A stretch of 64,000 bases of DNA, taken from positions 1,460,302-1,524,301 of the forward strand of contig NC_068993.1 in the NCBI RefSeq assembly GCF_001194135.2. Reading direction: 5' to 3'. A program made the position numbers and the translations under genes. Below the pieces are notes generated by a model, which saw only the letters and a program-made list of their open reading frames with translations, did no database searches and had not been told where the DNA came from. This document shows, piece by piece, positions 6,355 through 64,000 of this stretch. Every line of letters begins with the position of its first letter. Positions within the stretch are counted from its first letter, which is position 1. Origin of the DNA: Octopus bimaculoides. Its lineage: Eukaryota.

Positions 6355-8915
6355 CATGCATTCCTGCATATCACAGCACACATGAATTTGTAGAATTTGA
6401 CTTCTGTACGTATGCATACGTTTANNNNNNNNNNATTTGTAGAATTTGACTTCTGTACGTATGCATACGTTTATATGTCTAAATGTGTGTATATGTACAT
6501 ATAGGTAGGGGGGGGGCTCCAAAAGGGGTCTCAGGGAGTAGCATCCCTACCTGGCTTTGGTCTTGGGACCACTCCTGCCTAGAAACTGAGGTTGGGGGTA
6601 AGCAAAGGCATGCTCCCCGTAGAAAATCCAGCTCCAAAAAAGCCTCATGATGGCGAAGGAGAATGGGCACCAGCCAGCCAGTCAGCCAGCCAGCCAGTCA
6701 GCCAGCCAGCCAGCCAGCCCAAAGGTTGGGGTGGGCTGCACCTGCCTACCTTGGTTGCTATGGCATTGAGGTAGATCCAGCCATTCCCGTTAACAGGGAC
6801 AAAACCTGGATTGAAAACACTGGATGATGATGATGATGATGATGATATGTATATTAGATTGAATGAGATAACAAATCCAAGACTGTGAGGAGTTTTCAGG
6901 ACATTTATAATGAAATTGTCTTACAACTGTTTCTGGAATATCAAGGATATCCCTTCATCAGAGACGGTGTGAGAAGATATTTGAGTTTGAACTATTGTGG
7001 AAAAGATAGGGAATATAGAGGGGAAATAAGAGAATGAAAGTAGAAATAAGATATATAAAGATATTGTAGTTGCAGTTCCATTATTCGAGGAAAATGGTGT
7101 ATAGAAGTGGTAAAAATGTTTCTTGTACATGATAAGTTCCAATAGCAGTTCATGTCTAGTGAGCCATGGAATCAGTGTTGCTCATTTGAAAGGGTTTTGT
7201 GGTGTGAATGAAAATTTGAGAATATACTGGTAGTATTTATGGATAGATGGCAGGAGAGATGTGTATGATTAGAAAGAGGAGAAAGGTCACATCTAAAAGA
7301 GGAAGAGAAAATGAGAGGAAGGAGAGAGAAAAAGGGAGAGAGACAAAATCAAAGAGTGAAAGAAAAAAAAAGGGAGAGAGACAAAATCAAAGAATGAAAA
7401 AAAATGAAGAAATGAAGAAAGTGAGAGAGGAAGTGTTAGTGGTCAAGATAAGTGATGGGAGGGTGGGAGAAGTGTGGGGGTAGGGAGGGAAAGGAAGAGA
7501 TTAGAAATCCAATCCTCAGCTTGGTAAACATTATCATCCAGGAACTAGGTTTAGGTTCAACAGATTTCTACAGATAAGATTTGAACCCAATTTTAATAAT
7601 GCCTTTGTTCCACTTCACAAGACATGATGATGATGATGATGATGATCATGATGATGATGGTAGTGGTGGTGGTGGTGGTGGTGATAATAATAAAGACAGA
7701 AGTGGTGATGACAGTAGTGGTAGTGGTGGCATTGATAATGTTAGTAGTGGTAGGGGTGGTGGTGGTGATGATGATGTTTGTAATGGTAGCAATGATAGGC
7801 ATGATGATGATGATGGTGGTGACTGGACCCCCACCCTCCAACCTTTGCAACAACGAGTACTCAGTTATTCCATCAACGGAACTCGTTGCTACATTAAGAT
7901 GTATGTGGCTGAGTAACCCATAAACAAGTTTACTCTTATTATAATTCACAGAATGAATCAATATGATCCAATATGCAGCAAGGCTGAACCAATGAATTAC
8001 AGTTACGGCTCATCAAACAGGCTTCGACACAGTCTCCTAGTTCCCTTCTATCTAATTTCATTCATAAGGATTGTATTGACCCAAGGCTATTTTAAAAGAC
8101 ACTCAAAATGCCAAGCAGTGGGATTGAACCTGGTACCTTGTGGTTTTGAAAAACTCTTCTGAACCAGTCAGCCATGCCTAAATGCAAACAGAAATGATAG
8201 ATGGAATTCTGGGTGTGGTACACAAAGTCTGAACCAGTCATAGAATATACAGACCTAGTTACGGTCTGATGGTCAGCAACTGTTTCATTGCATGGCCAGC
8301 TAGCAGTTAGTTTATAAGACTCTGCAGCTTTTTATCGTTAACATAAATGAGATATTTATTAATAATTCACACAAAGTACATTTCTATATGTCCCCAAAGT
8401 AGGTCATTAATGTAATTCAAGTAATTTCCTATTTCCAGTGAAGTTTCCTTCATTTCATTCACACATTTCTTCTTCTCCACATAATTAAACTTGTACAATA
8501 CTAATGCAAGAAGCCTTTACTTGGCACCCAAGCTGACAGAAACAGTAGCCAAATCTCCCTCAAATCCTCAAACTACACTTTAAAAGATGAAGGACACTAG
8601 AAGGACACAAGGATAATGTTGTTCCCGATACACAATAAGGGGGGAAGCTCATGGCTGGAATACATTTGTGCGTAGGACAAACAACATAGTTTGTAGAAAT
8701 AATAGAAAATAGTTAATAAATGGTCAAAAATCAAATGAATATGAACATCGTTTAATAAAGTGTTTCTTTGAAACATAATTTAAGACTATTTAATTAGTTA
8801 TTAGAATAATGTCTGTGAATAATTAGGATTAAAAATTTTTTTTTGCTTTGTTTACAAAATTTCGATTTGGAAACACTTACTTGTGTTGGATTCGCCTTTG
8901 TGTGTTGGTTGCTGT

Positions 8916-55330: not shown

Positions 55331-58300
55331 TTATTTCCTTGACTTTACTTGCTGACCACCTCTAACACAAAGTGGTTTGTTGGTTAGGTTAGAACTCAAG
55401 GCAGGGCTTTTAGCAGTTCTTGCTGAATTCTTTTTAGTTTCATTTTTCTTTGGTGGAACCGTCTTAATATTTTTGTCTTTTCCTAAAGATAATTTTGGTG
55501 CCTTTTGACCAAAATTTCTCTGGTTTGTATTATTGGGTTTTAGGGAATTCTCTTTATCCTGTATTTTCAATTGAGGACAGATTTTCTCTGTTTGGTCTTT
55601 ACTCTTTTCAATGGACAATTTTGGTGGCGCTTTGCTAACTCGAGCCTGGTTTGTGTTACGAGGTTTCAACACAGCTTTCGATAATCTGCTGATAAAATTT
55701 CCAAACGAAGACCTTCGGTCAGATTTCTTTGGTTTGTTATCTGGGCTTAACTGGAAAAGAACTGGCATTTCTGGAACAGTGCTCACTTCTTTTTTGGTAA
55801 GGGTATTACTCGGTGTTTCAAGATTAAGACTTTCAAGGGTAAATAAGCTTTCTGGCCGTGCAAGTGGTGCCTTCAGTATCTCACCATTTTTTATTTCACA
55901 TATTTCTTTATATTTGTGCCACTGGTTTTCACCAGAGACAATACTGTCCGTGAAATCGCTTTGGCTTCGCACATGGGTTTTCTTAAAAGGCTTCGATGAA
56001 CTTTCTGAACATGTAGCTTGACTTACTTTGGTAAAAGGTGCTGTGTGAATTTTAAATAGCATTGTCTTGGCTAAATTGGTAAATTAACAAATAATAATAA
56101 TAATAAATAAAATCTTGGAATATTATATAAATTCAATGAACAGATGAAATTCAGACATGAAAATTAACAATTCTAACTATACCTCAACATTAACTGTTAT
56201 AGTAAGATTGAAATCTATTTATAGTATAACCAGGGACCAACCTCATTTCACAGCTACAGTAGCTGCTGCATTAAAACAGAATGGTTGTGGTATAAACCAT
56301 TGGCATGGAGAAGAGGGAAACGAGGGTTGTGATGCTCAAATCTTTTACAAGAACATTAATAATATCAAACATGTGAAATAGCCACAAACAAGGATGTAAA
56401 TCTTAGTCTTGGTTAATTAACTGTTTGTTTTATGTTCATTTTTCTATGCTGACATGGGTCAGATGAATACAAATTACTGAAGTATTGTTTTAAGGCCAGA
56501 TATCCTTCCTGCCTGTCACTACATCATACCTGTTTTACAAGGAAAGAATTAAAAAAAATTCCTTGCATCTTTGAAAGTGGTGAGCTTGCAAACAATTTAT
56601 TGACAGGGGATGCCAACAAACTTTGCTATTTGGAGCTTTGCAGAGAATGTAAACATTCACACACACAAGCTTCTGTACAGATTCCATCTAACAGATTCAC
56701 TCACAAGGAATTAACTAGGCCTAGGACTACAGTAGATGTCACTTGCCCAAGGTGCTGTGCAGTGGATTAGAACCTGCTACCATATGGTCGGAGAAGTGAA
56801 CTTCTTGACCACGCCATATAATTGAAATAAAAATGTTTTACATACCAGAAGAAATTTTGTTTTTCTGTGTAATGCGGAAATCAGTCAATGTTTCGTCAAA
56901 GTCATCTTCGTCTTCTGGGAGTTTTATTTGACTTCCAGCAAAACTGATTCGACTAAAATTCAGATGATGTTTAGAAGCATCACTTCGAGCTGGAGTACTA
57001 ATCAAATTATTAGGTTTTCCAGCAAATTTCTCAAAGTTACCACCATGAACCTCTTGAAGGATTCGATCCATTGGACCTTTCTTGTTCTCCAAAGCAGATG
57101 AACATGCATCTGTGAGTAAACAGAAAGAAATTCAGACAGAAATTCATAGTTTTATAATTTACAAAAATAAAGAGAAAAATCCACGAAAATGGCTAGTTTA
57201 ATTGAGAAACATTTTATCATCATCATCATCATCATTTAACGTCTGTTGTTCCTTCAAGAGAAAACAGGGAATCAATAAATATTTCAAATAGTTATCAGCC
57301 TATAGATTCGAACCTCTTCATAAAATAATTTTGATGCCGACACCGTCTAAATGAAATATTGTATCTTACAAAGAAAACTTTACAGAAATATTATTGCTGT
57401 TAAGCAAAATATCAACAGGAATATCAACTGATGCCAGAATTGAGTGAANNNNNNNNNNNNNNNNNNNNNNNNNNNNNNNNNNNNNNNNNNNNNNNNNNNN
57501 NNNNNNNNNNNNNNNNNNNNNNNNNNNNNNNNNNNNNNNNNNNNNNNNNNNNNNNNNNNNNNNNNNNNNNNNNNNNNNNNNNNNNNNNNNNNNNNNNNNN
57601 NNNNNNNNNNNNNNNNNNNNNNNNNNNNNNNNNNNNNNNNNNNNNNNNNNNNNNNNNNNNNNNNNNNNNNNNNNNNNNNNNNNNNNNNNNNNNNNNNNNN
57701 NNNNNNNNNNNNNNNNNNNNNNNNNNNNNNNNNNNNNNNNNNNNNNNNNNNNNNNNNNNNNNNNNNNNNNNNNNNNNNNNNNNNNNNNNNNNNNNNNNNN
57801 NNNNNNNNNNNNNNNNNNNNNNNNNNNNNNNNNNNNNNNNNNNNNNNNNNNNNNNNNNNNNNNNNNNNNNNNNNNNNNNNNNNNNNNNNNNNNATTTTAT
57901 ATAGAGCTGTTGTTATATTTATGATGTAGGTGTGGACTCTTCAAACTGAAATGAAACCAACACACACAAGGAGAGCAATAGCTGTGAATAAATACTGATA
58001 TGATGTACAGGATACTCTTTATAGACCTGACAAACTCTCCAGTGCTGGTGGCACAATAAACTGCATCCAGTCTCTGCCATAGAATAGTCGGTGATATGAA
58101 GGGCAGCCAATCTACCTCTGACACAACAGAAAATATTGGTTTCAAATTTTGACACAAGGCCAGCAATTTTGTGGGGAGGAGGCAAGTTGATTACATTGAC
58201 CCCAGTGCTCAACTGGTCCTTATTTTATCAACCCCAAGAGGATGAAAGGCCAAGTCAACCTCAGAACATAAAGACAGACAAAATGTCACAAAGTATCTTG

Positions 58301-61300
58301 TCTGGCATGCTAATGATTCTGCCAGCTCACCACCTTTGCAATGGGAAATATTGACAGTTTTTTTCCTATGCTGTACGTCAGATGGTGAAGGAGAACAACA
58401 AATAGCAGAATGCTGTCACACCTGTCCAACCCTTGGCAACAGAGAAAAGTGAATATTAAACGAAGATCAATGCGGATAAATATGTTATAAAAGAAGAATT
58501 GCATTAGAAATCAGAACCCAAGTTGGCCCTGAATGAGTGGATCTATGATCAAAAGCTCTCCACACATGACAATCCCTGTACTACGTTAGCTTATGTGGCC
58601 TTCCTTCCCTTTTAAGATGGTACAGGTGTAATCTTAAGGAGATGTGACTATTATTTCTACAACATGAAATGATCACACAGCTCCAGGAGTCAATCAGAAT
58701 AAATGACAAAGAAAGTTTCACTGAATTGTCAGTTAAATTAAACCCTGAACACCATCTGATGGTATCAAGAGAAATAAGTCAACTTACTCTACCAAATTCA
58801 TTGAAGAACCAGAAAATTGCTACCATTACTTACTGTACGACATTTCTTTACTGCTTCATAGAATTCATGGAGATCTTGGAAGCACTTCTGAAGGCTGAAA
58901 TCATCGACGTTTTCACAGAAGTAACCAGCTACCTTATGAGCCAATGTTCGTAAAAGTCTCAACCGTGTTTGGAGTTCACCAAATAATAATTTCACATCCT
59001 GAAAAATATTCAGGAATTTTTTTTTCTTTTTGATTGAAAAAACATTTTTAGATCAACATAATTAATAGTGGAAAGACAGTGTGTAGCTAAACTGTTTGTT
59101 ATACAAAACTAATTATAATAATAATTACTTGCTTAGGAATAAAGTTAGATTTAATGAGAGGAGGAAGGACAGGACTGATGACCCTTTTTCAGTGTCTGCT
59201 GAGGATGGTGGCAGGAAAGAAGTCAGTTAGTTTGGTCCAAATGCTTGCTCTACTAAAGATACCCAAGTGTCAGATGGTGGTGCTAAATTTGGCTGACAAA
59301 TTAAATGACTTAAAGCAAAACAGCTCCTTGGACAAACGTCCACACAATTTCCATCTACCAAATTTCACTCAGCGACAAGAAAAAAAATTCAATGAAACCT
59401 CAAAACCTCACCTTGATAAAAATACTAAATAAATTGTTCACTTCCTGGTCAGCTTGACTGAGTTCTTTCAGAAACTGCTTTAAACTGTTACTCAATGCCG
59501 TTACTTCATTTCGCGTCTCATCCAAACAACATCTTTACAGGAAAATAAAAATAAAAACATTGGTTGCAATTATTCATTTTTATGGAAATGAAAACAGTTT
59601 GATTTTGAAGTAGAAAAAGAAAAAGATTGCTTACGCTGCAGCTTTCTCCAGAATGTCTGCATCAGCAGTGAACATGAGAACCTGTTCATCGTTTTCTTCA
59701 GCCAATTCCACTAAATGATGAAGTAAGTTGAAATAGCTGAATTCGGTAGCTTTTATTTTGGACACTTCAAGCAGACTTGATAACTTGAAACCATACGCAC
59801 AGCCATAACAGCTTTCCTATAAACCAGAGAACATATAGAAATATGCATCACACATATATAATAGATAAACATACATATACATACACACAGAGGTGAGGTG
59901 TACAAATTTACCCTGTAAACCATATATGTGAGTCGGGGGTCGGATTAATGTTGGATTTTATGTTCAGTTATGATAAAATCAATTTTGCATAAATCTAAAG
60001 GGCTTACTCCACAAATATATCCGACAAGTCAAGTGAGACCAGCCCATTTATGAATACCCCTCATTCATTGGACAATAAACCTTGCTTGTGAAGACCTATT
60101 GAGGCAAGTGAAATCAAAATTCCTGACATGGCTGACGACAATACCGCCTGACTAGCACTCGTACCAGTAAAAGCACATCCGAGCATGATCGTTGCCAGGA
60201 CTACAGATTGGCTCCCGTGCTGGTGACACATGAAAAGCACCATTTGAGCATGATCGTTGCTAGCGTCGCCTTACCAGCACATGTGCCGGTGACATGTGAA
60301 AAACATTTGAGCATGGTCATTGCCAGTGCTGTCAGACTGGCTCCCGTGCAGGTAGCACATAAAAACACCTTTTGAGCATGATCGTTGCCAGAATCGCCTG
60401 ACTGGCCCTTGTGTTGGTGGCACGTAAAAAGCACCCACTACACTCTCGGAGTGGTTGGCGTTAAGGGCATCCAGCTGTAGAAACTTTGCCAGACTAGATT
60501 GGAGCCTGGTACAGCCTTCTGGCTCACCAGTCCTCAGTCAAACCGTCCAACCCATGCCAGCATGGAAAGCGGACGTTAAACAATGATGATGATGACACAT
60601 ATATGTATTCAGAAAATAGAGAAATCAGAAATAGAAAATAAGGAATAAACAAAATATAAAAAGAAAAAATTTGGAAATTATTTACCTGGTTAAGGTAATT
60701 ACCAGCTCCCAAAATTAAATGAAGGAAATCTCTCAAGCCTGCATCTTCTAAGACAGTTTTGCAGGCATCTACCATGCTACGAATACTGGTTCGCAGTTTG
60801 ACAAATTTGATAAGGAATTCTGATTGAAGGAAATGACCTCTCAGTATCAAATGGAAATCGTTGACATCAGATAATTCAACAAGGAACTGTTCAGTTGGGT
60901 GAAGAAGCAATCTTTCACCTTGGTAAGAACGAAGTGCTGCCACCTACAGGAAATACAGTTTAGAATATTTTAAGAACACTGTTTTTTTTTATCTTTGGTC
61001 GACTAATACTTACGATTGTTCTAAATGATTATTTTAATAGAGTAAAATAACTCATTAAGCACAAGACATGGGATTCTAAAAGCAAAAATATATTTGAGAG
61101 CCAATGCTGTTGATAGAAGAATTAGGAAGTTAAGCATAAGTTTTCTCTAAAGTTTTAATTTAAAGAATACGTTATTTCATACTCACTTCTTCTTTAGTTG
61201 GAAGAATCTTGATAAGACTCGACAGAGTGGTCTGAGGTATGCTAGCAACATTGTTCTCTTGTAAAGCTCTGACTAAATCCTCAGCATCATATTCACTTCG

Positions 61301-63773
61301 TGTAAGAAACAGTGTGACATTCATCAAAGTCTGCATTCCGACCAGCTGCCTCGACGAAGATTGATAAAAGAAGAAATGAAGAGATAAATGGGAAACATTT
61401 AACAACAAAAACAAATTGTGTAACTCAAGTGGACACATTAAAGGACTCCAGAAATATTTCTGAGTGGATTATTGAATAACAATTGGTGAACAAGTGTGTG
61501 ATTGATTATTAGTTTCTAATGGATCATCACTGGCTTAATGCATTTCTGATAAGAATGACAAGGGGAGTATCTGTAAGTTGGCACAGAACAAATATCACAA
61601 TGGACTTTATATCAAATGTACCAATCTTTATAGATGTGCATCAGCAAAATGTAAACACACAACTACACACTAACACACATCTGCATACATGACAGGCATC
61701 CGCACCAAACTCTACATGTATGGTATCAATCAGCATACCATTATGAGAGGCAACACTGGCACCAAATACCAGACAGTGAGATCAAAGAGAGAACAATGTT
61801 GTTGCAAAACTTCTAAACCTCACAGATTCACCTGCACTTTATAACGTAATGGAGAGATTTAGTTTAGTCTTACTTACATGGGTATTTTCAACAGGAATAT
61901 TAGAATAAAACAGGTCTTCCATTTTACTAAAATTTGGTATAATTGGTAGAAAGTCATTACTGGATCTCCAGATGCAATTATCTGATTTCTCTGTAAAAAA
62001 GAAAAAGAAAAAAAAATCAATAATAAATTATAATATTTGTATAAACCATAGGAAGGTCATGTAGCCATAGAAACCATGCCAAATCAGACTGGAGTCTGGG
62101 ACAGACCTTCAGCTTACCAGTGCTAGACAAACTATCAAATCCATACCAGCATGGACAATGGACGTTAAATGATGATGATGATGACTTTAGAAATTTATAT
62201 AATAGTCTAAATCCTCAACTGGATGAAGTATATTACTTAAGTATGATAGAGAGGCCAGGAGCCAAGTGTCTTTACTGAAGAAGTGAATACATAGAGAAGC
62301 CAAAGTGCAAGGTGAATATGAAAGAAAACAGGAAGAAAATGGGTGGGTAAGTTAGTAAGAAATAATAATTTTGTACCGATTTCTTTTGGTGTTATTTTCG
62401 ACCAATGGATTTTCTTCAATTTCTTTGATGGTGTGAAACACATCCATAATAAAAGTTTGTCACAATTAGTGTCAAACAGATTCTTTTCAGTTCCAAATGG
62501 GTATTTAATTACAGGGGCAGCATTTCCTTCTTGACTATCACTGCTTCCTTCACAAAGAGAATTAATAAAATTATCTTCCTTCAGAATGTCAAGATCTTTG
62601 TCGTACACTTTCTTACACTTCTGACCGTCTGTCCAGACTGGTTTCTCTCCCGATTGAATTTTGGGAATAAGGTTTTCAATCAGCTGCCATTTCTCTGAAC
62701 TAAAGACAACAAAATAATAATAATTAATAAAGATATTTTAATGAACAAAAGGTTTACCTATAAATAACTTCTAAAGAAAAACAAGAAACTAAAAGTATTT
62801 ATTTAGAAAAAACCTTTTGTGAGGGGTGGGGGGAGGGCAGGCAGTACCCATGATTTTTTACATGGTTCCCAGGATTGGCTTTGGTGGGAGGTTGAGAAGG
62901 AGGTATCCTTAAACTGGAAACCTGCCTCAAATGCTTGCAACAAAATGGGGTCCACTAAAGGAACCTCCAAGGTGCCTGGTGGTGATGGTGTTAACCTGAC
63001 AATGGTGTCTACGACTGATGGAAAGTAGTTCTTTGTGGATATTTATCAAAACTGCCATTCTTTTACTTGTTACAGTCCTAACAGTGTGGCTAAACTGCAG
63101 CACTTCTTTCAAGAATCTATTTGGTTACATAAACACCTTGGTACATCACTAATATTACCAACTTTAGCATGTAAATAAATATTAGCTAATACTCAAGATA
63201 TTTTGTCCAAGACAATACCAATTCTAACAGCCACCCAAGAGAATAAACAACATTTAACCTAAGATGGAATAATTCTAAACCATTAACAGCTCATCTTACA
63301 GAAATGGAAGGAAATGGTTTGTGGTTATCTCCCTTCAATGACACGAAATATATAAATGCAAACCAGAGGGAGTCTGGTTCTCTGCATTCTGGGTTCAAAT
63401 TCTGTCATGGCTTACTTTGGCGGTAGACTTCATCTCCAGCCCAGTTTAACATTACCATTTCCTAACTCTTTGGTGCCTCCAGCAGAGTTCATTTCATCTC
63501 CTAACTATTTAGTACCTCTAGCAAGAATTCATTCTGTTGCAAGTATTCAGACCAGGTCTCCCTTCCTCTCACCAATCTCAGGGACCCAGAAGGGAGCAAT
63601 GGGCAGGGCCCTTCATTCTAATTGAGCAATAAATAAAAGAATATTCAATGAATTAACACATGGGGCAAAGTAAAAAATTTTCTTTACTTTTCTTCGTTTT
63701 CACTGTTGTATTCAAGGGAGAGTAAATCTTGTAAAATGTGCAGAAACGATACATATTTCGGTGTTCCCAGAGT
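55331..63773 (-). CDS. Formin, INF2/FHDC1-like (FH3-FH2-long C-tail), 5'-partial; exons 63773-63688, 62699-62377, 61990-61878, 61345-61187, 60943-60686, 59816-59635, 59532-59412, 58998-58834, [one exon unseen], 57109-56846, 56040-55331
   Basis: FH3-like SFLHILQDLLSL...KWQLIENL. FH2 lasso KKLKKIHWSKI...CIW...MEDLF, NVTLFL, LILGAGNYLN, AYGFKLSSL, NLLHHLVE, YFCEN...F. After FH2, a DAD/WH2-like MDRILQEVHGGNF. All visible junctions are GT-AG and phase-consistent except across the N gap 57449-57893. Confidence 0.92.
60030..60594 (+). mobile_element. Composite SINE with four internal ~63-66 bp tandem units, in a formin intron
   Basis: GAGCATGATCGTTGCCAG...GGCTCCCGTGC.GGTG.CAC...AAAAGCACC units start at about 60180, 60246, 60309 and 60374. 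The 3' end is CCAGCATGGAAAGCGGACGTTAAAC(AATG/GATG)n. The 5' boundary is approximate. Confidence 0.75.
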
Positions 63774-64000
63774 CTGGAAAATGAAAACAAACATCAGAGA
63801 AAGTATTTAATTTCTTCAATATATCATTCAGCAATGAAGCTAACAAACTAAATTCATTACTTCAGTAACATTAAAAGAGTTAATGAGCAGAGAGAGAGAG
63901 AGTGTGTGTATGTGCATGTGTGTTTCCATTTGTGCTTCTCTGAAAACCACTCAGATACAGAGAATGGTAATGTTACTTTTGTTTTTTTCTTTTCAATAGG

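What the first reader, a model, noticed from the sequence alone, without database searches (positions are those of the whole stretch)
62377..62699. Formin with no FH1 polyproline domain: FH3 tail and FH2 start share one exon
Seen: exon 62699-62377 encodes the end of the FH3/DID-like region (SEKWQLIENLIPKI), an approximately 75-aa linker with only a few isolated prolines, and the FH2 lasso start (TPSKKLKKIHWSKI). Because all three are in one exon, an FH1 cannot be supplied by an alternative exon. Established: nearly all metazoan formins carry a polyproline FH1 immediately before FH2 that recruits profilin-actin for elongation. Inference: this could be a capping, bundling or microtubule-directed INF2-like paralogue uncoupled from profilin. 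This is the strongest candidate for something undescribed in the window.
Basis: partly seen in the sequence, partly recalled or inferred. Interest (0 to 1): 0.7.

Follow-up and report, generated by a model that had tools for sequence, protein, structure and literature searches.

The report
Octopus INF2-like formin without FH1
This octopus gene encodes a real, expressed-looking relative of the actin regulator INF2 that has lost the proline-rich FH1 segment formins normally use to feed actin to growing filaments. The loss is shared by a whole group of mollusc (and probably annelid) genes that nobody seems to have described.

Summary
Window 62699-62377 (minus strand) is exon 7 of Octopus bimaculoides "inverted formin-2" (XP_052828524.1). 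It encodes the end of Pfam Drf_FH3 (to residue 309), a 71-aa linker with 3 isolated prolines, and the FH2 start (residue 381).

No proline-rich reading window exists anywhere in the gene, introns included, in three octopods. Spliced RNA-seq contigs from a cuttlefish carry the same FH3-linker-FH2 sequence. dN/dS is 0.03-0.3, so this is not a pseudogene.

It is not an octopus oddity. Sixteen proteins from cephalopods, bivalves, gastropods and the annelid Owenia lack FH1. The nine that entered my FH2 tree form one clade (bootstrap 87), separate from canonical mollusc INF2, which keeps FH1. In canonical INF2 the FH1 lies inside the homologous exon, so FH1 was lost within that exon.

The clade also lacks the basic WH2/DAD motif, has Leu (Val in Owenia) for the conserved knob Ile, and in molluscs has its own C-terminal motifs.

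The likely function, inferred and not shown, is a profilin-independent barbed-end-binding, bundling or regulatory formin. The closest analogue is Dictyostelium ForC. I rate it a new variant of a known kind, of moderate interest.

The parts
63688..63773 (-). Exon 6: late part of the FH3 domain (TLGTPKYVSFLHILQDLLSLEYNSENEE). Exons 1-5 lie beyond the window end.
   Evidence: P0004 mapping; matches the cuttlefish orthologue.
62377..62699 (-). Exon 7 (323 bp), the finding: FH3 tail + proline-poor linker + FH2 lasso start in one exon.
   Evidence: Same exon in O. vulgaris (323 bp), Argonauta (326 bp) and cuttlefish (L001:40419-40751).
62648..62698 (-). FH3 tail, residues 293-309 (SEKWQLIENLIPKIQSG). 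AlphaFold2 predicts a helix at residues 292-307.
   Evidence: Pfam Drf_FH3 143-309; AF2 helix H292-307.
62435..62647 (-). Linker, residues 310-380: 3 isolated prolines, no PP. Residues 316-372 are predicted disordered.
   Evidence: dN/dS 0.034 against O. vulgaris and 0.20 against Argonauta.
62377..62434 (-). FH2 start, residues 381-399 (TPSKKLKKIHWSKITPKEI), including the first lasso Trp.
   Evidence: Pfam FH2 381-728; alignment.
61878..61990 (-). Exon 8: FH2 lasso with the second Trp (NCIWRSS...MEDLF).
61187..61345 (-). Exon 9: FH2 knob. It carries NVTLFL, where Leu replaces the conserved Ile of canonical INF2 (NVNIFL).
60686..60943 (-). Exon 10: FH2 core ending in GNYLNQ.
59635..59816 (-). 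Exon 11: FH2 post region (GFKLSSLLEVSKIKA...); the basic residue of the D(T/V)K motif is kept.
59412..59532 (-). Exon 12: FH2.
58834..58998 (-). Exon 13: end of FH2 (...EAVKKCRT). The true donor GTAAGT is at 58833-58828. The RefSeq model reads on to 58810.
   Evidence: This exon is 165 bp in O. vulgaris and Argonauta.
57449..57893 (.). Assembly gap (N run) that probably hides exon 14 (109 bp in the relatives, encoding ENRLFKKQH...KKKLS in Argonauta).
56846..57109 (-). Exon 15: degenerate DAD/WH2-like helix (MDRILQEVHGGNFEKF) without the basic LRK part.
55334..56070 (-). Exon 16: C-terminal tail with clade-specific motifs RSQSDF, PLARPE...LNLE and SFGNFISRLSKAVLKPRN. Stop codon at 55331-55333.

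Best explanation
The exon belongs to a genuine gene under purifying selection. The gene is a spiralian paralogue of the formin INF2 with the architecture GBD/DID-FH3, short disordered linker, FH2, degenerate DAD-like helix and a conserved tail. It has no FH1.

It arose by duplication of an INF2-type gene, probably before molluscs and annelids split. The proline-rich FH1 was then lost from inside the homologous exon 7. The same lineage lost the basic WH2/DAD 'LRK' motif and changed the FH2 knob Ile to Leu.

With no polyproline tract it cannot recruit profilin-actin through an FH1. I therefore infer that its FH2 dimer binds barbed ends or filament sides without speeding elongation from the profilin-actin pool. 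It would then act as a slow or leaky capper, a bundler or scaffold, or possibly a partner or antagonist of canonical INF2. The retained DID and DAD-like helix may still provide autoinhibition.

Shown here: gene structure, absence of FH1, conservation, selection, paralogy, and transcription in cuttlefish. Inferred: everything about biochemical activity.
For: Exon and domain borders.

The same exon holds FH3 tail, linker and FH2 start in O. vulgaris, Argonauta and a cuttlefish genome.

Four independent Logan RNA-seq contigs (3.4-3.5 kb, uninterrupted 1056-aa ORF) align to the cuttlefish genome in 16 blocks. They carry the FH1-less junction.

No window with 6 or more prolines in 12 residues exists in any sense frame of the whole gene, introns included, in three octopods.

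dN/dS against O. vulgaris is 0.10 (GBD-FH3), 0.034 (linker), 0.15 (FH2) and 0.32 (tail). The linker gives 0.20 against Argonauta.

All 16 relatives examined have linkers of 56-305 aa with 3-8% proline and proline runs of at most 3. Most canonical INF2 proteins have 14-41% proline.

In the FH2 NJ tree the nine FH1-less proteins with a complete FH2 form one clade with bootstrap 87. Canonical mollusc INF2 forms a separate clade, also 87.

Biomphalaria, Ylistrum, Dreissena and Owenia each have both paralogues; Pinctada has the FH1-less gene plus a second FH1-bearing INF2-like gene.

Exon sizes are shared between paralogues. Canonical Owenia exon 7 (983 bp) holds FH3 tail, FH1 and FH2 start.

The best solved-structure matches for both the N-terminus and the FH2 are human INF2.

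Pfam finds no Drf_FH1 or WH2 hit in the clade. Canonical controls give weak, below-threshold hits: Drf_FH1 and WH2 in the sea star, WH2 only in Lottia.

The canonical DAD motif is found in 0 of 14 clade members and 94 of 283 other proteins.

AlphaFold2 gives a confident DID and FH2, with residues 316-372 disordered.
Against: No octopus transcript was inspected directly. The octopus exon structure rests on gene models from three genomes plus cuttlefish RNA-seq.

The tree is neighbour-joining on 48 sequences that are almost all INF-type. The FH1-less proteins sit on long branches, so placing Owenia with the molluscs could be long-branch attraction. Owenia also lacks the mollusc C-terminal motifs.

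Ile to Leu is a conservative change, and the lasso Trp residues, GNxLN and the post-region basic residue are kept. The FH2 may therefore be fully competent to nucleate.

FH1-independent delivery of actin, or heterodimerisation with an FH1-bearing formin, would restore profilin coupling. No biochemical data exist.
Confidence: 0.75

Rival explanations
1. Assembly or annotation artefact: a repetitive, GC-rich FH1-coding stretch was collapsed, lost in a gap or skipped by the gene predictor, and the real protein has an FH1.
For: The window has many N gaps. The RefSeq model is demonstrably wrong at exons 13-14, next to a gap. The cuttlefish annotation splits the gene in two and skips an exon.
Against: Exon 7 and both flanking introns are gap-free. 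The exon is the same in three octopod assemblies and one cuttlefish assembly. Assembled mRNA contigs from four RNA-seq runs read straight through FH3-linker-FH2. No proline-rich frame exists anywhere in the locus.
Confidence: 0.02
2. Decaying duplicate: a pseudogene or non-functional relic of INF2 that happened to lose its FH1.
For: The branches are long. The knob Ile is changed and the LDxKR motif is lost. The WH2/DAD motif is degenerate.
Against: The 16-exon ORFs are intact in three octopods. dN/dS is 0.03-0.3 in every region, including the linker. Clade-specific C-terminal motifs are conserved from cephalopods to bivalves and gastropods. The gene is transcribed and correctly spliced in cuttlefish.
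Confidence: 0.03
3. The protein is still coupled to profilin-actin indirectly. It could heterodimerise through FH2 or DID/DD with an FH1-bearing INF2 paralogue, as was proposed for Dictyostelium ForC. Alternatively, the conserved linker motif (DTGVEL in bivalves, GTE in cephalopods) could recruit another actin-delivery factor. The gene would then be a modulator of canonical INF2 rather than an autonomous capper or bundler.
For: The lasso and post elements needed for FH2 dimerisation are kept. Canonical and FH1-less genes coexist in several species and lie about 55 kb apart, head to head, in the scallop. The heterodimer idea for ForC is in PMC555941. A short motif is conserved within the linker.
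Against: FH2 identity to canonical INF2 is only about 25-30%. No canonical INF2 from any cephalopod appeared among the best 120 matches to a mollusc INF2 profile, so a partner may be missing in octopus. Nothing was tested directly.
Confidence: 0.15

Closest known systems
Canonical INF2 (inverted formin-2; human structures 9azp, 9az4; mollusc orthologues such as Lottia LOTGIDRAFT_224207)
   Same: The best sequence matches for both the DID/FH3 and the FH2 are INF2. Both have the truncated GBD + FH3 N-terminus. Exon-intron structure is shared, with the 116-, 160-, 258- and 165-bp exons and a homologous exon 7.
   Different: It has no FH1 and no basic WH2/DAD 'LRK' motif. Leu replaces the knob Ile and the LDxKR motif is lost. 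It has its own C-terminal motifs. It forms a separate clade.
Dictyostelium ForC (GBD/FH3-FH2 formin lacking FH1; Kitayama & Uyeda 2003, cited in PMC555941)
   Same: The architecture matches: a GBD/FH3 joined directly to an FH2 with no FH1. ForC is reported not to bind profilins. It is the closest functional analogue.
   Different: The two arose independently. ForC is amoebozoan and clusters with other groups in the PMC555941 tree, whereas this protein is an INF2 duplicate within spiralian animals. That purified ForC bundles filaments and lacks nucleation activity is my recollection of later literature. I did not check it here.
FHDC1 / INF1
   Same: It is an INF-subtype FH2 protein.
   Different: From general knowledge, FHDC1 lacks DID/FH3 and has an FH1. 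This protein has GBD and FH3 and no FH1, so it is not an FHDC1 orthologue.
Other animal formin-family proteins without a proline-rich region: opossum PHCF (Pruyne 2016, PMC5047451) and, without FH1 or FH2, Drosophila MWH
   Same: These are precedents that FH1 can be lost in animal formin-family proteins.
   Different: They belong to different subtypes. The opossum case is a single species. Here the loss is fixed in a whole clade spanning at least three mollusc classes.

Membership tests
Formin (FH2-containing protein) | FH2 domain | tested here: met
   Pfam PF02181 at residues 381-728, E 1.3e-52, covering profile positions 6-372 of 372. The window exons alone give E 3.9e-56.
Formin (FH2-containing protein) | FH2 dimerisation and actin-contact residues (two lasso Trp, knob Ile, GNxMN, post-region Lys) | tested here: inconclusive
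   Both Trp residues, GNYLN and the basic residue are kept. The knob Ile is Leu in all mollusc members and Val in Owenia, and LDxKR is lost. The effect on activity is unknown.
INF subtype (INF2-like) | DID/FH3 and FH2 both closest to INF2 | tested here: met
   The PDB search puts INF2 first for both the N-terminus (E 9e-78) and the FH2 (E 2e-28), ahead of DAAM1, mDia1 and FMNL. The nearest library proteins are named INF2 or INF2-like. Gene structure is shared with canonical INF2. A tree with all nine subtypes was not built.
Conventional Diaphanous-related architecture (GBD/FH3-FH1-FH2-DAD) | GBD/FH3 N-terminus | tested here: met
   Drf_GBD at 30-134 and Drf_FH3 at 143-309. The AlphaFold2 DID model has pLDDT above 90.
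Conventional Diaphanous-related architecture (GBD/FH3-FH1-FH2-DAD) | Proline-rich FH1 immediately before FH2 | tested here: not met
   The linker has 3 prolines in 72 residues and no PP. There is no Pfam Drf_FH1 hit. No proline-rich frame exists in the whole locus in three octopods.
Conventional Diaphanous-related architecture (GBD/FH3-FH1-FH2-DAD) | C-terminal DAD/WH2 motif (LLxxIxxGxxLRK) | tested here: not met
   The regex for the basic motif hits 0 of 14 clade members and 94 of 283 other proteins. There is no Pfam WH2 hit. A degenerate helix, LxxLHxGNF, remains.
ForC-type FH1-less formin (Dictyostelium) | GBD/FH3 joined to FH2 without FH1 | tested here: met
   The architecture matches (PMC555941). 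This is an analogy of design, not shared descent.
ForC-type FH1-less formin (Dictyostelium) | No profilin binding; filament bundling instead of nucleation | not testable with these tools
   This needs purified protein.
FHDC1 / INF1 | FH1-FH2 at the N-terminus with no DID/FH3 | tested here: not met
   GBD and FH3 are present and FH1 is absent.

The most novel reading that the evidence does not exclude
Cephalopods may have lost the canonical, FH1-bearing INF2 altogether. They would then keep only this FH1-less, WH2-less paralogue as their DID-containing INF formin. In that case INF2-type functions in octopus, such as ER and mitochondria-associated actin, are either carried out without profilin coupling or were handed to other formins. 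More generally, spiralians would possess a tenth, functionally distinct 'capper or scaffold' formin type that has been hidden under the INF2 label.
Probability: 0.2. Interest if true: 0.7.

Novelty: new variant of a known kind. Interest (0 to 1): 0.5.

Why it matters
FH1-mediated delivery of profilin-actin is regarded as the core of how formins elongate filaments. A natural animal lineage has kept an FH2 under purifying selection across at least three mollusc classes, a span of hundreds of millions of years by general knowledge, after discarding both FH1 and the WH2-like motif. That makes it a ready-made experiment on what an FH2 does on its own in vivo: capping, bundling, microtubule binding, or regulating a sister formin.

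It also shows that the database label 'inverted formin-2-like' in molluscs covers at least two architecturally different proteins. This matters for transferring INF2 functions by annotation.

The interest is moderate, not high. FH1-less formins have a precedent in ForC, the proteins are already in public databases, and no function is demonstrated.

Tried and rejected
1. The first word-indexed homologue search with the concatenated window exons returned only three proteins and missed the octopus protein itself. The exhaustive HMMER search was needed.

2. The 107-aa exon alone gives no Pfam hit. The FH3 border only shows in the full-length protein.

3. I looked for a second formin gene in the window. 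I found none. A weak tblastn match at 8489-8415 ('LEIGNYLN', E 0.28) looks like chance.

4. I tried to find a canonical cephalopod INF2:
- None appeared among the top 120 hits of a mollusc INF2 profile.
- The unnamed Logan transcripts P0188, P0193 and P0194 turned out closest to gastropod or Mytilus sequences.
- The divergent representative P0018 is from the brachiopod Lingula.
The question stays open, because I could not search cephalopod genomes directly.

5. Other FH1-poor hits are scattered fish, insect and DAAM models or predicted isoforms, not members of this clade.

6. Hamster mDia1 (P0003) was unusable as a residue reference because the model is partial. I used canonical INF2 instead.

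7. Literature searches for an FH1-less INF or mollusc formin found nothing specific. Pruyne 2016 lists several oyster and limpet INF genes without, as far as I found, commenting on FH1.
Full report
**1. What is at the coordinates**

The minus strand of window 62699-62377 has an acceptor AG at 62701-62700 and is followed by a GT donor. From 62698 it reads without a stop as SEKWQLIENLIPKIQSGEKPVWTDGQ...NAAPVIKYPFGTEKNLFDTNCDKLLLWMCFTPSKKLKKIHWSKITPKEI.

An exhaustive HMMER search recovered a 1099-aa protein, P0004, that is identical to the window's exons. It is XP_052828524.1, 'inverted formin-2' of Octopus bimaculoides, so the window comes from that species.

The same stretch is exon 7 of 16 in the chromosome-level record (L007). 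The window holds exons 6 to 16. Exons 1-5, which encode GBD and most of FH3, lie beyond position 64000.

**2. Domain borders**

Pfam on P0004 gives Drf_GBD at 30-134, Drf_FH3 at 143-309 (E 7e-26) and FH2 at 381-728 (E 1e-52). There is no Drf_FH1 and no WH2.

Exon 7 encodes residues 292-399. It therefore contains the last 17 residues of FH3, a 71-residue linker and the first 19 residues of FH2.

AlphaFold2, run on a 25-sequence alignment, models the DID with pLDDT above 90. It puts a helix at residues 292-307, leaves 316-372 disordered (pLDDT below 50) and models the FH2 at 70-90.

**3. Is FH1 really absent?**

- The linker has 3 prolines in 72 residues and no PP dipeptide. Most canonical INF2 relatives from echinoderms, vertebrates, Lottia and Biomphalaria have 14-41% proline and up to 19 runs of three or more prolines in the same interval.
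- I scanned every sense-strand frame of the whole gene, introns included, in O. bimaculoides, O. vulgaris and Argonauta hians. There is not one stop-free window with 6 or more prolines in 12 residues. No hidden FH1 exon exists.
- All three octopods have 16 exons, with exon 7 at 323, 323 and 326 bp.
- In the cuttlefish Acanthosepion pharaonis, one contiguous genomic block (L001:40421-40750) encodes FH3 tail, linker and FH2 start.

**4. Transcript evidence**

A search with a profile of the clade found a 1056-aa protein, P0291, from Logan assemblies of four sequencing runs (SRR29271463, SRR29271467, SRR29271469 and SRR29271481). It sits on contigs of 3.4-3.5 kb with an uninterrupted ORF.

These contigs align to the A. 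pharaonis genomic locus in 16 blocks at 94-100% identity. They are therefore spliced mRNAs of a closely related cuttlefish. Block 7 (L001:40419-40751) is the FH1-less exon.

I could not inspect octopus RNA-seq.

**5. Not a pseudogene**

Nei-Gojobori dN/dS between O. bimaculoides and O. vulgaris:

| Region | dN/dS |
|---|---|
| GBD-FH3 | 0.10 |
| Linker | 0.034 (1 change in 72 codons, dS 0.17) |
| FH2 | 0.15 |
| C-terminal tail | 0.32 |

Against Argonauta the linker gives 0.20.

**6. It is a clade, not an octopus oddity**

The closest relatives after the cephalopods are 'INF2-like' proteins from:
- scallop (Ylistrum), pearl oyster (Pinctada) and zebra mussel (Dreissena);
- Mytilus, Sinanodonta, Mya and Tegillarca;
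- the gastropods Biomphalaria, Lymnaea and Elysia;
- the annelid Owenia.

All 16 members examined have FH3-FH2 linkers of 56-305 residues, with 3-8% proline and proline runs of at most 3.

I built a neighbour-joining tree of 48 FH2 domains. The nine FH1-less proteins with a complete FH2 form one clade with bootstrap 87. The mollusc members without Owenia get 61, and bivalves plus gastropods get 92. Canonical mollusc INF2 (Lottia, Lymnaea, Biomphalaria, Argopecten, Potamilus) forms a separate clade, also at 87.

Several species have both genes: Biomphalaria, Ylistrum, Dreissena and Owenia. Pinctada has the FH1-less gene plus a second, FH1-bearing INF2-like gene. In the scallop the two genes lie about 55 kb apart, head to head, on one contig. 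In Owenia they are 7 Mb apart on one chromosome.

**7. How FH1 was lost**

Exon maps show a shared gene structure, with exons of 116, 160, 258 and 165 bp in both paralogues. In canonical Owenia INF2, exon 7 is 983 bp and encodes FH3 tail, the whole FH1 and the FH2 start.

The homologous exon is 542 bp in the scallop FH1-less gene and 323 bp in octopus. The one-exon layout is therefore ancestral for INF2-type genes, and the proline-rich middle was lost inside that exon.

**8. Other clade-wide changes**

- Canonical INF2 has N-V-N-I-F-L-K-Q-F at the FH2 knob. Every mollusc FH1-less member has Leu at the Ile position, Owenia has Val, and the preceding LDxKR is gone. This Ile is the residue whose mutation abolishes actin assembly in other formins. 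That point is my own knowledge; mDia2 I704A appears in the abstract of PMC2364705.
- The lasso Trp residues, GN(F/Y)LN and the basic residue of the D(T/V)K motif are retained.
- The canonical DAD/WH2 motif ([DE][IL]x.G..L[RK]K) is found in 0 of 14 clade members against 94 of 283 other proteins. A degenerate helix, LxxLHxGNF, remains.
- The mollusc members share tail motifs found in no other protein of the set: RS(R/Q)SD, PLAxPE...LNLE and (K/R)AVLKP(K/R)N.

**9. Mechanism (inferred)**

The protein keeps the elements for FH2 dimerisation and most actin contacts. It lacks the two INF2 elements that handle actin monomers, FH1 and WH2.

In a cytoplasm where most monomer is bound to profilin, such an FH2 should nucleate poorly. 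It should also slow or block barbed-end growth instead of accelerating it.

I therefore favour a profilin-independent role as a barbed-end binder, a bundler or a scaffold. The DID and the DAD-like helix may still provide regulation.

A second possibility is that it modulates canonical INF2 by hetero-oligomerisation. This idea was raised for ForC in PMC555941. None of this was tested.

**10. Comparison with what is known**

The best solved-structure matches for both halves of the protein are human INF2, so it belongs to the INF subtype. It fails the FH1 and DAD/WH2 features of the conventional GBD/FH3-FH1-FH2-DAD architecture.

The nearest analogue of design is Dictyostelium ForC, which lacks FH1 and does not bind profilins (PMC555941). 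ForC has an independent origin.

Pruyne 2016 catalogued several oyster and two limpet INF genes. It noted an opossum PHCF without a proline-rich region. I found no remark there on FH1-less INFs. Full-text searches found no description of such a clade.

**11. Open point**

A profile of canonical mollusc INF2 retrieved bivalves, gastropods, a chiton, a nemertean, an annelid, echinoderms, vertebrates and cnidarians in its top 120. It retrieved no cephalopod. Unnamed candidates turned out closest to gastropod or Mytilus sequences, or to be from the brachiopod Lingula.

Cephalopods may therefore lack a canonical INF2. I could not search their genomes, so this is only a lead.

**12. Verdict**

It is a new variant of a known kind, and I score its interest at about 0.5.

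Noticed in passing
window 58810-58833, 58036-58111 and N gap 57449-57893: The RefSeq model XP_052828524.1 is wrong here. It reads through a consensus donor (GTAAGT at 58833-58828) and adds a 76-bp exon (58111-58036). The result is 'TVSNGSNFLIGCPSYHRLFYGRDWMQFIVPPALEN'. O. vulgaris and Argonauta instead have a 165-bp exon 13 and a 109-bp exon 14 (ENRLFKKQH...KKKLS in Argonauta). That sequence is not found in the window and probably lies in the assembly gap.
   Followed up: yes
L001 (Acanthosepion pharaonis CAHIKZ030000701.1), 10001-72860: The cuttlefish genome annotation splits this gene into two models (651 aa and 661 aa) and skips the exon at L001:47727-47893. The RNA-seq contigs L002-L005 show one 16-exon, 1056-aa gene.
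   Followed up: yes
P0154 (O. sinensis XP_036363977.1), region aligned to window ~62480-62420: The O. sinensis model diverges in the 3' part of exon 7 (…IKYHLELKESI…RLKKIHW) and is 16 residues shorter. This looks like a local frameshift or assembly error, not biology.
   Followed up: partly
window 55334-56070 (exon 16) and 56846-57109 (exon 15): Tail motifs RS(R/Q)SD, PLAxPE...LNLE and SFGNFISRLSKAVLKPRN are conserved from octopus to bivalves and gastropods. The last is a predicted helix at residues 976-987. They occur in no other protein of the 297 collected. Their function is unknown; they may be binding or targeting sites.
   Followed up: partly
window 61187-61345 (exon 9): The conserved FH2 knob Ile (NVNIFL in canonical INF2) is Leu in every mollusc FH1-less member and Val in Owenia. 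The LDxKR motif before it is lost.
   Followed up: partly
one search hit list (no locus): No cephalopod protein appears among the best 120 matches to a canonical mollusc INF2 profile, although more than 40 other molluscs do. Canonical INF2 may have been lost in cephalopods.
   Followed up: partly
L006 and L012 (Ylistrum balloti JAUZWB010001139.1): The canonical INF2 gene (147.6-196.2 kb, reverse strand) and the FH1-less paralogue (251.4-266.2 kb, forward strand) lie about 55 kb apart, head to head, on one contig. This is consistent with a local duplication.
   Followed up: partly
P0042 (Myxine isoform X7), P0043 (Mobula isoform X2), P0031, P0056 (teleosts): Some vertebrate INF2 predicted isoforms or models also show no proline runs between FH3 and FH2. 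These are probably exon-skipping predictions or model errors, but FH1-skipping isoforms of vertebrate INF2 might be worth a look.
   Followed up: no
window 8415-8489 (minus strand): A weak tblastn match of a ciliate FH2 to 'FNYVEKKKCVNEMKETSLEIGNYLN' (E 0.28). No other formin-like exon lies nearby, so it is probably chance.
   Followed up: partly
window 62802-62970 (intron 6, minus strand): Short open frames with scattered prolines (…LPALPPPLTKGFF, …IPPSQPPTKANP…) lie in the intron upstream of exon 7. They fall below the proline-rich threshold and are absent from the cuttlefish mRNA. They are not an FH1 exon and may be repeat-derived.
   Followed up: partly
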